From Asterias rubens (taxonomy: Eukaryota): a stretch of 64,000 nucleotides of DNA. A program made the position numbers and the translations under genes. The notes under the pieces are model-generated. The model saw only the letters and a list, made by a program, of their open reading frames with translations, made no database searches and was not told where the DNA came from. The stretch spans positions 5,332,001 through 5,396,000 of the forward strand of contig NC_047071.1 of assembly GCF_902459465.1 (NCBI RefSeq), read 5' to 3'. Shown piece by piece: positions 38,379 to 60,234 of the stretch. The stretch's first letter is position 1; the number at the start of each line of letters is the position of its first letter.

Positions 38379-40714
38379 TTCATATGAAGACAATAAAAAT
38401 ACTGTTAGACGGCTGTCTGTCTTCATTGGAATTATGGGAGCACCCGAAAGACAGACGTTGAGGGCGCTCGATTAACAAAAACAATTCTTAAAGGAGGAAC
38501 AACAATCATGTGAAAGCCTATAAGTTCTATACTCTGACATTAAACTGGGGTCGTATTTACACTTTTTAACTTGAGTTTTTTCTCCGACAGCTCTGTGCAC
38601 AAAATTCCACTTGGGGATGCTGTTGAGAACGATTCGGGGCAAGAACGCATACTAGTCATTTGCGCAATCAAGAAGTGTGGAAGTCACCCTAACACTTTTA
38701 AAATTATGACGCAGGGACATGCTATAATGACGCAGGTACAAACTGCGTCTCTTTAGCAATTTTAGTTCTAGAGTTATGAAAGAGTTTTGCTGAAAGAAAT
38801 ATTTTACCGGGGCCATTTTTCCAGTGAATATTTGTCTTTCTTTCTATTCGCCACAGTACCATGTGTTTTTTAGACCAAGTTTCCCACGTATTAATGTATA
38901 AACAAATGTTGTAATTTTGAATTGTCAGAGGCAGAGGCCAAGTTATGGATCCCATTTGCGAATGTTGTGAAAACACACACATTACTGATTTTACCTGATG
39001 TTCCAACATTTGCTGCGTTTCACTTTAATAATTGTTTAATGAAGGCGGGAATACAACTCAGATTGGGAAAATCAAATCCAATCTGTCTCTCTCTCTCACT
39101 CTAATTATAAATGTGTTTTTTATGCGTGAAGTCTCGAAATCAGTTCAAATATTTTATTGAGACGTTACTCATAATTATCTCAAAAACTACGTTTTACTTT
39201 AGAGGGAGCCGTTTTTCACATTTTTGTTAAACTATCAACAGCTCCCCGTTGTTCGTTACCAAGTAAGTTTTTGTGCTGACAACTATTTTGAGTAATTACC
39301 AATAGAGTCCAGTGCTTTTAAACGTTTTCTCCCCATTTACTTGGGCGCACCACCTCGGTATGTGGAATAAACCGATTGCGCTATCAATGTTCACATGTGA
39401 TCAAGTGATCTATAGTGGGTATAGACAATCAAAGCTACACAATAAAGAAATTGGAAAACTGGTACCGATGGGCCATAATCGGCTGTATTTTCGAAAATAA
39501 CTCTTCCAACTAAAAATGAAGCCCTTTTTCTAAAGTTAAATGTTGTGATATTGATTTAAATCCCAATTTGCTGTTTGATATTTTAAGTATTGTACTACAA
39601 AAAAAACCCAGTTTCTTTTGAGAGTATTGTTAGACTACGTAAATGAGGTTTGAGCGAGCTCACGCGCCGTGAATTTTGCGTTGTGCACGGCGTAAAGCCG
39701 GGCTGGGCCAAGGGAGACCGCAAAGGTATCCGACTCTAGCTGACAGCTACCCCTTCTAATCAAATAATTTAAGAATTTGCGAATTTGCGAATCAAGCGAA
39801 TTTGCAGCTTCTTCATTGAAAATATTGGCAACAAAATCATAACAATGAGAGCATTGTAAAACCACACTTTCCGTGCTCAAACACATGACATCATGTGAAC
39901 ATTCTAGTGGGATTTCCTATAGTTGGTGGATTTGCAAAACTCTTGTTTAAAATAGCATCAGACAATTTCCCCATAACTGTAGATGTGTTGGTCAAGTTCT
40001 AACCTTTCCATGCATACAATTTTCTTTTACGAGGACTCAATATCTAAGCCTGAAACGACCACTATGAAATGACATTGTTTCCGATAGTGAAATTTTATTC
40101 AATTTTTTGTCACATATAATGTTACATCGATTTATGTAACATATGAATATTGCTTCAAATAATGATGATGATCTTAGCAAGTCAATTAATCCAATCACGC
40201 AATAGTTGTTGTAAAATTGTCTTGCGACAATTTCGAGAAACAAACTCGTTTTTGTTATTTGGGCATTATTGGTGCTTAAGGCAGTGGAGTCGCATGCAAG
40301 TTGATACATTCTTACTATTTCCGACACTCTGTGTACCCCCCCCCCGTGTCTCTACTGCCCCCCCCTTCAGAAAACAAACAAACAAACTAACAAACACCGC
40401 ATATTTATGTAAATTGGTACGTTTGTTTACATCAAATTCATCGTGTTTCGCCATTTTGTTTTGTTGCATAATGCCCCCCCCCCTACATCACCGCTGCTTT
40501 TATGTAAACTTGTGGGTTTGTTTTTATTAGATCCATCGTTTTTCGCCATTTTGTTTATGTTACATAGTGTTTTTGATCAAACTAGTTACTTATTTATGTA
40601 ATATTTATGTATTTAATATTTTGGATGTATTTTTTTTATCGAAACAAATAAATTATCTGCCGATGTGATTATTTAATTTTTTAATTATTTTTCCTAGACA
40701 AATGCAGGTAATAG

Positions 40715-40748
40715 TCTCTTTTTGTAAGTTGTGGCTCTGAAAAGAGCC
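40715..40748 (-). promoter_or_regulatory. Histone 3' stem-loop and U7-type downstream element (recurs downstream of each copy; damaged in copy 13)
   Basis: GGCTCT-TTTC-AGAGCC (40748-40733), ACAACTTAC, then AAAAAGAGA (40723-40715). Confidence 0.93.
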
Positions 40749-40782
40749 GTTTGGTTTGGTTGATTGTCCCGGTGGGAACTGA

Positions 40783-41379
40783 CTACTTCTTTGGCTTGGT
40801 GGTCTTCTTCGGCTTTGCTGCTTTGGTGGCCTTCTTTGCCTTTGGCTTTGGACTCTTTGCGGCTTTGCTGGGCTTGGCGACTTTCTTTGGTGGCTTGGCT
40901 GCTGTTTTCTTGGCTGCAACTTTCTTGGTGGGTGTCTTCTTGACGATTTTCTTTGGAGTCTTCTTCTTGGTTATCTTGGTTTTCTTGGCCTTCTCCTTCT
41001 TGGCTGCGGCTTTCTCTGCTTTCTTGGCTTTCATCTCTGCTTTCTTTGCTTGATCCTTCTCTTTCTTGGCCTTGGCTCGTTCTTTGACCTTCTCCGCCTG
41101 TTCCTTGGCCTTGTCCTTTGCTGGGTCCAATTTGAATGAACCGGAAGCTCCCTTGCCCTTGGTCTGGATAAGAACTCCCTTCTGCACACCGGTATTGAGG
41201 GCTTTTCGGATGAAAACGGCCTGCCTGTCCATGTCGACTTGGAATGTGTCCTTGATGTACTTTCTGATGGCTTGACTGGACGAACCGTTTTTCTCCTTCA
41301 GTGCCACGATAACGGCAACCACCATCTTGATTGCTGGAGGGTGGGCCCGAACGGTTGCAGACTTTTTCACGGTAGCCAT
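40783..41379 (-). CDS. H1: Histone H1, copy 1 (198 aa; A23V and S164P relative to consensus)
   Basis: H15 globular domain HPP…[11 protein letters not shown]…[11 protein letters not shown] plus K/A/P-rich tail; intronless. Confidence 0.95.
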
Positions 41380-58078: not shown

Positions 58079-58677
58079 CTACTTCTTTGGCTTGGTGGTC
58101 ATCTTCGGCTTTGCTGCTTTGGTGGCCTTCTTTGCCTTTGGCTTTGGACTCTTTGCGGCTTTGCTGGGCTTGGCGACTTTCTTTGATGGCTTGGCTGCTG
58201 TTTTCTTGGCTGCAACTTTCTTGGTGGGTGTCTTCTTGACGATTTTCTTTGGAGTCTTCTTCTTGGTTATCTTGGTTTTCTTGGCCTTCTCCTTCTTGGC
58301 TGCGGCTTTCTCTGCTTTCTTGGCTTTCATCTCTGCTTTCTTTGCTTGATCCTTCTCTTTCTTGGCCTTGGCTCGTTCTTTGACCTTCTCCGCCTGTTCC
58401 TTGGCCTTGTCCTTTGCTGGGTCCAATTTGAATGAACCGGAAGCTCCCTTGCCCTTGGTCTGGATAAGAACTCCCTTCTGCACACCGGTATTGAGGGCTT
58501 TTCGGATGTGAAAACGGCCTGCCTGTCCATGTCGACTTGGAATGTGTCATTGATGTACTTTCTGATGGCTTGACTGGACGAACCGTTTTTTTCCTTCAGT
58601 GCCACGATAGCGGCAACCACCATCTTGATTGCTGGAGGGTGGGCCCGAACGGTTGCAGACTTTTTCACGGTAGCCAT
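58079..58677 (-). CDS. H1: Histone H1, copy 12, with an apparent 2-bp frameshift at ~58508 (pseudogene or sequencing error)
   Basis: 599 nt versus 597; CGGATGTGAAAACGG versus consensus CGGATGAAAACGG. Confidence 0.65.
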
Positions 58678-59740
58678 GATGATAGAGATAGATGATGCGA
58701 AGGGAATCGTTTCGTAAGAAGCTTTACAGCGAGCAATACTGATGAGACCCCACGGACCGTCAGCCTTTTTCAAGGGTCACGGGTGGCTCTGAGCAGCCCC
58801 TGGGTCCATTCACGCTGCTCAATCAACCGGCGAGACTCGGCGGTTCGCGTGGAGCTGGAATTTACTCCAATATTAGTGTGTTTCATTTTTCTTCTGATTT
58901 GCAAAATTCTTGTTTAAAATAGCATCGGACAATTTCCCCATAACTGTAGATGTGTTGGTCAAGTTCTAACCTTTCCATGCGTACAATTTTCTTTACGAGG
59001 TCTCAATATCTAAGCCTGAAACGACCACTATGAAATGACATTGTTTCCGATAGTGAAATTTTATTCATTTTTTGTCGCATATAATGTTACCTCGATTTAT
59101 GTAACATATGATTATTGTTTCAATAATGATGATGATCTTGAGCAAGTCAATTAATACCAGATCACGCAATAGTTGTTGTCAAATTGTCTTGCGACAATTT
59201 CGAGAAACCAACTCGTTTTTTGTTATTTGGGCATTTATGGTGCTTAAGGCAGTGGAGTCGCATGCAAGTTGATACATTCTTACTATTTCCGCCCTTCTGT
59301 GTACCCCCCCGTGTCTCTCTACTGCCCCCCTTCAGAAACAAACAAACAAACTAACAAACACCGCATAGTTATGTAAAATTGGTACGTTTGTTTACATCAA
59401 ATTCATCGTGTTTCGCCATTTTGTTTTGTTGCATATGCCCCCCTACATCAACCGCGCCTTTTTTGGTAAACTTGTGATTTTGTTTTTTATTAGATCCATC
59501 GTTTTTTCGCCATTTTGTTTCTGTACATAGTGTTTTTGATCAAACTAGTTACTTATTTATGTAATGTTATGTATTTAATATTTTGGATGTATTTTTTTTA
59601 TCGAAACAAATAAATTATCTGCCGATGTGATTATTTAATTTTCAATTATTTTTCCTAGACAAATGCAGGTAATAGTCTCTTTTGTAAGTTGTGGCGCGAA
59701 AGAGCCGTTGGTTTGGGTTGATTGTCCCGGTGGGAACTGA

Positions 59741-60234
59741 CTACTTCTTTGGCTTGGTGGTCTTCCTTCGGCTTTGCTGCTTTGGTGGCCTTCTTTGCCT
59801 GTTGGCTTGGGACTCTTTGCGCTTTGCTGGGCTTTGGCGACTTTCTTTGATGGCTTGGCTGCTGTTTTCTTGGCTGCAACTTTCTTGGTGGGTGTCTTCT
59901 TGACGATTTTCTTTGGAGTCTTCTTCTTGGTTATCTTGGTTTTCTTGGCCTTCTCCTTCTTGGCTGCGGCTTTCTCTGCTTTCTTGGCTTTCATCTCTGC
60001 TTTCTTTGCTTGATCCTTCTCTTTCTTGGCCTTGGCTCGTTCTTTGACCTTCTCCGCCTGTTCCTTGGCCTTGTCCTTTGCTGGGTCCAATTTGAATGAA
60101 CCGGAAGCTCCCTTGCCCTTGGTCTGGATAAGAACTCCCTTCTGCACACCGGTATTGAGGGCTTTTCGGATGAAAAATGAAAACGGCCTGCCTGTCCATG
60201 TCGACTTGGAATGTGTCCTTGATGTACTTTCTGA
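59741..60234 (-). CDS. H1: Histone H1, copy 13, partial, many indels, 5' end in the N gap
   Basis: Clear homology; low-quality sequence at the contig end. Confidence 0.6.

What the first reader, a model, noticed from the sequence alone, without database searches (positions are those of the whole stretch)
39925..60234. H1-only tandem gene array of at least 13 copies, with no core histone genes
Seen: the 1.66-kb unit holds a single intronless H1 with promoter, stem-loop and HDE, and the ~0.9-kb spacer has no H2A/H2B/H3/H4 ORF. Ten copies have intact ORFs. The array runs into a 100-N gap, so the copy number is a minimum. Established: the usual invertebrate repeat is a quintet with H1 or a core quartet, and separate orphon H1 clusters are known in mussels, but those H1s are a distinct lineage. 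My recollection that sea-star repeats were reported as core-only should be verified; if right, this may be the missing H1 locus. Inference: linker-histone dosage evolves independently of core histones here.
Basis: partly seen in the sequence, partly recalled or inferred. Interest (0 to 1): 0.72.

Follow-up and report, generated by a model that had tools for sequence, protein, structure and literature searches.

The report
Sea-star linker-histone (H1) gene array
This is a real head-to-tail array of 13 histone H1 genes in the common sea star, one of three such arrays; it lies beside, not apart from, the core-histone repeats, which the reference assembly has largely lost.

Summary
Window 39929-60234 (minus strand; Asterias rubens chr 11) carries 13 tandem units of about 1.66 kb. 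Each holds one intronless H1 gene. Ten ORFs are intact, one is 5'-deleted and two are frameshifted, and the last is cut by the 100-N gap. Each unit has a conserved H1-box promoter, a histone stem-loop and the same downstream element as this genome's own core histone genes. No core histone sequence lies in the unit or anywhere in the window.

The interpretation needs correction on linkage. A second H1-only array (19 copies) lies 48 kb away and a third on chr 4. Array B directly abuts H3, H2B and H2A genes and fragments. Public metagenome contigs 98-99.6% identical to those remnants show the classical sea-star core quartet (H4-H3-H2B-H2A, same strand, about 5.4 kb, tandem). No complete unit of it was found assembled in the reference. 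One 7.4-kb contig joins H3-H2B directly to an H1 array.

So H1 and the core quartet are amplified as separate repeat families side by side in one composite locus. The 11:1 H1:H4 ratio in the assembly is not reliable. Other first readers of this scan noted array B in neighbouring windows. This is a new member of a known kind (mussel-type H1-only clusters). True copy numbers and expression are untested.

The parts
39929..60234 (-). H1-only tandem array A: 13 units, consensus 1660 nt
40783..41379 (-). A1 H1 CDS, intact (198 aa, 2 substitutions). This edge unit ends at 39929, just before the next H1 box
42158..42754 (-). A2 H1 CDS, intact. The spacer towards A1 lacks unit nt 1099-1380
43823..44061 (-). 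A3 truncated H1 CDS (aa 120-198 only; unit nt 1-355 deleted)
45129..45725 (-). A4 H1 CDS, intact
46792..47382 (-). A5 H1 CDS, intact, 196 aa (in-frame 6-nt deletion)
48420..49016 (-). A6 H1 CDS, identical to consensus; PF00538 linker histone
50088..50684 (-). A7 H1 CDS, identical to consensus
51751..52347 (-). A8 H1 CDS, intact
53412..54008 (-). A9 H1 CDS, intact
55074..55670 (-). A10 H1 CDS, intact
56440..57036 (-). A11 H1 CDS, intact. Its promoter lacks unit nt 1570-1601 (TATA-like box and cap region)
58082..58677 (-). A12 H1 pseudogene: 2-nt insertion at CDS nt 167; downstream element one A short
59744..60234 (-). A13 H1 pseudogene: 7-nt duplication plus two indels, broken stem-loop; 5' end runs into the gap
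50037..50052 (-). Representative histone 3' stem-loop GGCTCTTTTCAGAGCC (unit A7). The Rfam RF00032 match spans 50012-50057
50019..50028 (-). Representative histone downstream element CAAAAAGAGA, 8 nt after the stem. Same motif and spacing as behind this genome's core histone genes
49214..49222 (-). Representative H1 box GAAACACAC in the promoter of A6; invariant in two related taxa
49103..49111 (-). Representative TATA-like TTGAAAAAG of A6, inside a block conserved in related taxa

Best explanation
The region is a genuine tandem array of replication-dependent linker-histone H1 genes of Asterias rubens. Each 1.66-kb unit is a complete transcription unit. It has an H1-type promoter (H1 box, GC block, TATA-like box), an intronless 198-codon ORF, a stem-loop that SLBP (stem-loop binding protein) should bind, and a purine-rich downstream element for U7-directed cleavage. 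The array is one block of a composite histone locus on chr 11. There, two repeat families lie side by side in the same orientation and share only the 3' processing signal: H1 monomers (1.66 kb) and core quartets H4-H3-H2B-H2A (about 5.4 kb). Unequal exchange and gene conversion keep the H1 units 99-100% alike within and between arrays, while edge units decay. Inferred, not shown: the arrays supply bulk embryonic-type H1 mRNA, and because H1 and the core genes sit in separate repeat units their copy numbers can change independently.
For: Identity. The protein is a linker histone: PF00538, E=9.8e-28. It matches A. rubens 'histone H1.1, embryonic-like' at 99-100% identity over 91% of the query. 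Signals. Stem-loops pass the Rfam threshold in 12 of 13 units. The downstream motif and its spacing match those behind this genome's own H3, H4, H2A and H2B genes. The H1 box, GC block, TATA-like box and leader are conserved in two related taxa, whose upstream regions are only about 77-78% identical overall. Homogenisation. Inner units differ from the consensus by 0-1.2%; edge units A1, A2 and A13 differ by 1.7-3.5%. Arrays A and B have no fixed differences and share 5 polymorphisms. Selection. Segregating sites number 8 of 597 in the CDS against 39 of 1063 outside it, Fisher p=0.005. Orthologues keep an open frame. Independent reality of the tandem unit. Six metagenome contigs close with a 1659-nt period. 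The exact protein is indexed in 103 blocks of public assemblies. Composite locus. Array B abuts H3 codons 112-136, with H2A and H2B beyond. Contig L052 reads H3, H2B, H1 fragment, then H1 units. Quartet contigs L061-L070 are 98-99.6% identical to the chr-11 remnants, have periods of 5387-5438 nt, and hold no H1. The only homology between the H1 unit and the quartet unit is the roughly 45-nt 3' signal.
Against: No raw reads were available, so neither expression nor copy number is measured. All runs offered were contigs. In the metatranscriptome X15 the whole unit, spacer included, is assembled, which could be carried-over DNA. Four of the 13 window copies are defective: A3, A12 and A13, plus A11's promoter. 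Orthology to the sea-urchin early (alpha) H1 is not resolved by the tree. It rests on a shared DMDRQ..FI motif and a K/E-rich segment after the globular domain. The link between H1 arrays and quartets rests on the reference junction at array B and on one 7.4-kb metagenome contig. A second similar place was reported but not shown. Metagenome contigs can be chimeric.
Confidence: 0.8

Rival explanations
1. The array is an assembly artefact: one or a few H1 genes were expanded, or two haplotypes were stacked, by the assembler.
For: Both chr-11 arrays end in N gaps. The reference is clearly faulty at this locus, since no complete core quartet unit was found assembled.
Against: Units carry distinct, ordered structural variants and private SNPs. 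The flanks of the two H2A-H2B blocks are not homologous, so they are not haplotigs. Six independent metagenome contigs close at 1659 nt, which requires head-to-tail copies. L052 carries two full and two partial units in tandem.
Confidence: 0.04
2. The arrays are largely silent, satellite-like amplifications of an H1 gene. Functional H1 comes from the single-copy paralogues on chr 7, 12, 17, 18 and 22.
For: Four of 13 window copies are defective. Array B contains promoter-less 958-nt short units. No direct expression evidence was obtained. Homogenisation alone can keep copies alike.
Against: Segregating sites are about three times rarer in the CDS than in the spacer, p=0.005. Ten of 13 ORFs in array A and 17 of 18 full-length copies in array B are open. 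Promoter motifs and the 3' signal are conserved across taxa. RNA-labelled runs hold coding-region contigs.
Confidence: 0.12
3. The H1 unit is really part of a quintet-like higher-order repeat, with core genes hidden in the gaps. 'H1-only' would then be an illusion of incomplete assembly.
For: Core genes flank array B, and L052 shows H3-H2B directly upstream of H1 units. The gaps are unresolved.
Against: There are 13 and 19 consecutive H1 units without any core sequence. Quartet contigs show at least two consecutive units without H1. Closed 1659-nt H1 contigs occur in six samples. Both H1-to-core junctions are illegitimate breakpoints, one inside the H3 coding sequence and one in a spacer, not regular unit boundaries.
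Confidence: 0.04

Closest known systems
Mytilus H1-only tandem clusters (Drabent et al. 1999; Eirin-Lopez et al. 2002; summarised in PMC4106214)
   Same: Linker-histone genes are repeated in tandem on their own. The core histones form separate quartet repeats devoid of H1.
   Different: In Mytilus the core and linker clusters map to different chromosome pairs, and one H1 cluster is interspersed with 5S rDNA. Here the H1 arrays lie next to core-quartet sequence on the same chromosome in the same orientation. The tree shows no special affinity to the one 'orphon'-named H1 included, a spider protein; no mussel H1 was included.
Sea-urchin early (alpha) histone quintet repeat, containing H1
   Same: Both are tandem, homogenised, same-strand, stem-loop-terminated histone genes. 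The H1 protein shares the DMDRQ..FI motif and a K/E-rich segment with the urchin 'embryonic' H1 proteins P0130, P0129 and P0011. The fused Diadema gene model P0121 shows that the P0011-type H1 sits next to H4 and H2B.
   Different: In urchins H1 is one of five genes in each unit (review PMC13525598). Here H1 is the only gene in its unit, and the core genes form their own quartet unit. Orthology is not resolved by phylogeny.
Sea-star core histone cluster (Cool et al. 1988, as cited in PMC13525598)
   Same: The quartet H4-H3-H2B-H2A in contigs L061-L070 has all genes on one strand, as the review states for echinoderms. From my own memory it also matches the reported Pisaster order as a cyclic permutation.
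   Different: That work described the core cluster only. I could not read it. The H1 arrays beside the quartets are not mentioned in the review or in any paper I could search.
Drosophila virilis mixed quartet and quintet arrays
   Same: H1 dosage is uncoupled from core dosage by repeat-unit composition.
   Different: There H1 is present or absent within otherwise similar units. Here it forms a separate monomer repeat that has no spacer homology to the quartet.

Membership tests
Linker histone H1/H5 (Pfam PF00538) | Winged-helix globular domain matching the family profile above its threshold | tested here: met
   96.6 bits against a cut-off of 22.4, E=9.8e-28, residues 13-84
Linker histone H1/H5 (Pfam PF00538) | Lysine-rich C-terminal tail | tested here: met
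   The translation shows a K/A/P-rich tail after residue 130, preceded by a K/E-rich segment
Replication-dependent metazoan histone gene | Intronless ORF | tested here: met
   A single uninterrupted 198-codon ORF in 9 units, plus one of 196 codons
Replication-dependent metazoan histone gene | 3' stem-loop (Rfam RF00032) shortly after the stop codon | tested here: met
   12 of 13 units score 35.1-36.7 bits against a gathering score of 34. The stem starts 36 nt after the stop
Replication-dependent metazoan histone gene | Purine-rich downstream element at U7 spacing | tested here: met
   CAAAAAGAGA lies 8 nt after the stem. The same motif and spacing follow this genome's H3, H4, H2A and H2B genes. 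Pairing with U7 itself could not be tested: the Rfam U7 search found nothing, in the controls too
Replication-dependent metazoan histone gene | S-phase-coupled expression and non-polyadenylated mRNA ends | not testable with these tools
   Only contigs were available, no raw reads
H1-only tandem cluster (mussel type) | Head-to-tail repeat whose unit holds H1 and no core histone gene | tested here: met
H1-only tandem cluster (mussel type) | Chromosomal separation from the core histone clusters | tested here: not met
   Array B abuts H3, H2B and H2A sequence. Array A is 41 kb from the nearest core gene. L052 joins H3-H2B to H1 units. The chr-4 array is about 314 kb from the nearest core-type match
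Sea-urchin early (alpha) H1 | Membership of the tandem quintet unit with the four core genes | tested here: not met
   The unit holds H1 only
Sea-urchin early (alpha) H1 | Sequence orthology to urchin embryonic H1 | tested here: inconclusive
   Shared motif and K/E-rich segment, but a polytomy in the tree
Sea-urchin early (alpha) H1 | Expression in oocyte and cleavage stages | not testable with these tools
   No stage-resolved raw RNA reads were offered

The most novel reading that the evidence does not exclude
In asteriid sea stars the high-copy histone locus may be built from two independent tandem repeat families placed side by side: H1 monomers and core quartets. They share nothing but the 3'-end signal and have illegitimate junctions between blocks. 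H1:core gene dosage would then be set by separate expansion and contraction of each block. An H1-specific promoter, with an invariant H1 box, would be regulated apart from the core genes inside one nuclear histone body. This would be a natural test bed for the H1-specific control recently described in humans (CRAMP1; papers listed, not read).
Probability: 0.45. Interest if true: 0.55.

Novelty: new member of a known kind. Interest (0 to 1): 0.42.

Why it matters
It answers where this H1 type sits in a sea star whose classical histone repeat holds only core genes. It is an echinoderm example of H1 being amplified on its own. Unlike the mussel case, the H1 arrays are physically joined to the core repeats.

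It also flags two practical problems. No complete core quartet unit was found assembled in the reference, so gene counts taken from it are misleading. The public gene models for these H1 genes are mis-spliced.

The 1659-nt unit turns up in more than a hundred environmental assemblies. It may therefore serve as a sensitive marker of Asterias DNA in seawater samples.

Tried and rejected
Read depth and expression. All runs offered were Logan contigs, so read laying gave positions only, with no depth, ends or strand. I considered deriving copy number from contig word depth in run X33. I rejected this because the run type and its single-copy depth are unknown.

U7 snRNA. The Rfam U7 search of the genome returned nothing, and nothing in the controls either, so it is uninformative.

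Further genome fetches. I could not check those loci for gaps.

Phylogeny. The array H1 forms a 100/99 clade with two unnamed environmental proteins. Its relation to urchin, crinoid and other H1 types is a polytomy. Named S. purpuratus subtypes and mussel H1 did not appear among the listed hits.

Literature. Cool et al. 1988 is not held. The review's supplementary table is not held. Searches for Pisaster or Asterias histone organisation found nothing relevant.

Related species. Contig P0005 shows H1 ORFs 4364 nt apart with no Pfam-positive neighbours, but its DNA was not retrievable.

Haplotig explanation for the duplicated H2A-H2B block. Rejected, because the flanks are not homologous.

The bacterial promoter and terminator scan is irrelevant to an animal gene.
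Full report
**Source.** The window is chr 11 (contig C11, 5,332,001-5,396,000) of a 417.6-Mb, 150-contig assembly. The H1 protein it encodes matches 'histone H1.1, embryonic-like [Asterias rubens]' at 99-100% identity over 91% of the query, on a contig of the same length as C11. The sea-star guess is therefore right.

**Observation.** Repeat finding and BLAST with one unit show 13 head-to-tail copies on the minus strand, from 39929 to 60234.
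- The consensus unit is 1660 nt. It has a CDS at nt 1-597, a stem-loop GGCTCTTTTCAGAGCC at 633-648 and CAAAAAGAGA at 657-666.
- Upstream of the next ATG lie an H1 box GAAACACAC (1454), ATTGG (1468), a GC block and a TATA-like TTGAAAAAG (about 1566).
- Ten ORFs are intact.
- A3 lacks CDS nt 1-355. A12 has a CA insertion at nt 167. A13 has a 7-nt duplication at nt 163, two more indels and a broken stem-loop, and runs into the 100-N gap.
- A11's ORF is intact, but its promoter lacks 32 nt that cover the TATA-like box.
- The protein is a linker histone (PF00538, E=9.8e-28).
- Rfam finds the histone stem-loop in 12 of 13 units.
- The downstream element is not just purine-rich. It has the sequence and spacing found behind this genome's own H3, H4, H2A and H2B genes.
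- The promoter blocks, including an invariant H1 box, are conserved in two related taxa. Their upstream regions are otherwise only about 77-78% identical.
- tblastn with this genome's four core histones finds nothing in the window, even at E<=1.

**Is the array real?** Yes, in kind. The exact 198-aa protein is indexed in 103 blocks of public assemblies, mostly metagenome contigs of unit size. Six of eight such contigs have identical or near-identical ends that close a 1659-nt circle, which is the signature of a homogeneous tandem repeat. Laid contigs from a marine metagenome and a metatranscriptome gave the same closed unit of 1689 nt. Copy number is not measured, because only contigs were on offer and no raw reads.

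**Wider locus.**
- A genome-wide Pfam search finds the same H1 in a second array at C11:5,440,113-5,469,095. It has 19 copies on the same strand and ends in a 500-N gap.
- A third array of at least 5 copies lies on chr 4. Diverged single-copy H1 paralogues also exist.
- Of the 18 full-length copies in array B, 17 are open. One edge copy has lost its stop codon.
- Arrays A and B have no fixed differences and share five polymorphisms. Inner units differ from the consensus by 0-1.2% and edge units by 1.7-3.5%. This is the pattern expected from concerted evolution with decaying edges.
- The units next to the window's gap (A12, A13) are the most decayed. That side therefore looks like an array edge. 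The copy next to array B's gap is perfect.
- Segregating sites are rarer in the CDS (8 of 597) than outside it (39 of 1063; p=0.005). This is consistent with selection on the protein.

**Core histones.** The window's array is isolated. The 3.7 kb after the gap and the next 37 kb hold no histone gene. Array B is not isolated.
- Its last unit breaks at unit nt 1080 and joins H3 codons 112-136. Rearranged H3, H2B and H2A pieces follow, then intact H2B and H2A genes and a LINE.
- A second H3'-H2B-H2A block lies beyond array B's gap. Its flanks are not homologous to those of the first block, so it is a paralogous duplication and not a haplotig.
- No H4 occurs in the 184 kb examined. The whole assembly has only three intact H4 genes, each next to one of three canonical H3 genes on chr 5, 7 and 14.

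Taken at face value this gives roughly 30 intact H1 genes to 3 H4 genes. That ratio is an artefact of the assembly.
- I looked up the exact H2B protein carried by L052, the one public contig that joins core genes to H1 units. Its DNA is 99.4% identical to the chr-11 core block. It is indexed in 274 blocks.
- Contigs of 5-11 kb hold H4, H3, H2B and H2A on one strand. They repeat with periods of 5387-5438 nt, are 98-99.6% identical in DNA to the chr-11 remnants, and hold no H1.
- This is the core quartet that the review PMC13525598 attributes to sea stars, with all genes on one strand. From memory, its order also matches the one reported for Pisaster.
- The one contig that links the two families, L052 (7.4 kb), reads: intact H3, H2B, a breakpoint, an H1 fragment, a 5'-truncated H1, then regular H1 units.
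- The H1 unit and the quartet unit share only the roughly 45-nt 3' signal.

**What it is.** The finding is one block of a composite histone locus. H1 monomers and core quartets are amplified as separate tandem families, side by side and in the same orientation. [quoted passage not shown] Its relation to sea-urchin early H1 is unresolved. It does share with them a DMDRQ..FI motif and a K/E-rich segment after the globular domain. I infer, but have not shown, that the arrays supply embryonic-type H1.

**Known and new.** H1-only tandem clusters with H1-free core quartets are established in Mytilus, where they lie on different chromosomes (PMC4106214). The 2026 review lists separate H1 clusters only for Mytilus, Podocnemis and trypanosomes. 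I found no description of H1 arrays in a sea star.

The genes are already in RefSeq, but the models are wrong. P0002 (12 members) and P0001 replace the last 17 codons with spacer or next-unit sequence. Other first readers of this scan noted array B in neighbouring windows.

**Verdict.** This is a new member of a known kind, of moderate interest. A specialist in histone gene organisation would find it useful rather than startling.

Noticed in passing
L061-L070 (public metagenome contigs); remnants at G000:C11:5433313-5439641 and 5480589-5483649: A tandem core-histone quartet H4-H3-H2B-H2A, all on one strand, period 5387-5438 nt. It is 98-99.6% identical to the chr-11 remnants. No complete unit of it was found assembled in the reference, which has no H4 within 184 kb of the H1 arrays.
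   Followed up: yes
L052:1-7401 (ENA ERZ21849172 contig_18334): An independent contig joins intact H3 and H2B to an H1 fragment, a 5'-truncated H1 and then regular H1 units, all on the same strand. It shows an upstream edge of an H1 array inside core-cluster sequence.
   Followed up: yes
Proteins P0001-P0004; unit consensus nt 543 and 1013 (e.g. window 50142 and about 49672): The public A. rubens gene models for these H1 genes are mis-spliced. P0002 (12 members) uses a GC-AG 'intron' from CDS nt 543 to a spacer acceptor with a good pyrimidine tract. AATAAA lies at unit nt 1273, and one RNA-labelled contig lies on spacer nt 1053-1242. This may be a polyadenylated read-through isoform or an annotation artefact. 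The acceptor region does not align in the one related contig that reaches it (L039).
   Followed up: partly
G000:C11:5439636-5445986: Array B begins with a 2.63-kb higher-order repeat in which full units alternate with 958-nt short units. The short units keep the CDS but have only about 20 nt upstream of the ATG, so they lack a promoter.
   Followed up: partly
window 28515-28631 and 29604-29720 (+): Two 5S rRNA matches (64 and 58 bits) lie about 10 kb from the H1 array. This recalls the H1-5S linkage in Mytilus.
   Followed up: no
L011:1156-1884 (-) = G000:C12 near 17.92 Mb: A single-copy 242-aa H1 paralogue has SPKK-like N-terminal repeats (sperm-H1-like) and a canonical histone stem-loop.
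   Followed up: no
window 23464 (+) and 22356 (-): A variant stem-loop GGTTCTTTTCAGAACC occurs in dispersed repeats. The same variant lies near the chr-14 core cluster (L003, L035). It matches the hammerhead plus histone-signal retroposon of earlier notes.
   Followed up: no
Contig of protein P0005 (ENA ERZ26222911, 20,248 nt; DNA not retrievable): A 75%-identical H1 from an unknown relative occurs twice, 4364 nt apart, in a contig with a period of about 4.37 kb. Its other called ORFs have no Pfam hit. This may be an H1-only repeat with a longer unit in another species.
   Followed up: partly
window 15198-16226 (+); N run 16900-17192: A reverse-transcriptase ORF (RVT_1, E=5.9e-33) lies beside a 293-N run.
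   Followed up: no
window 62374-63000 (-): An ORF with acidic 24/42-nt tandem repeats and no Pfam match lies 2 kb beyond the gap.
   Followed up: no
The 1659-nt H1 unit is held by marine, macroalgal and sediment metagenomes from many studies. This fits a high-copy sequence that could serve as an environmental-DNA marker for Asterias.
   Followed up: partly
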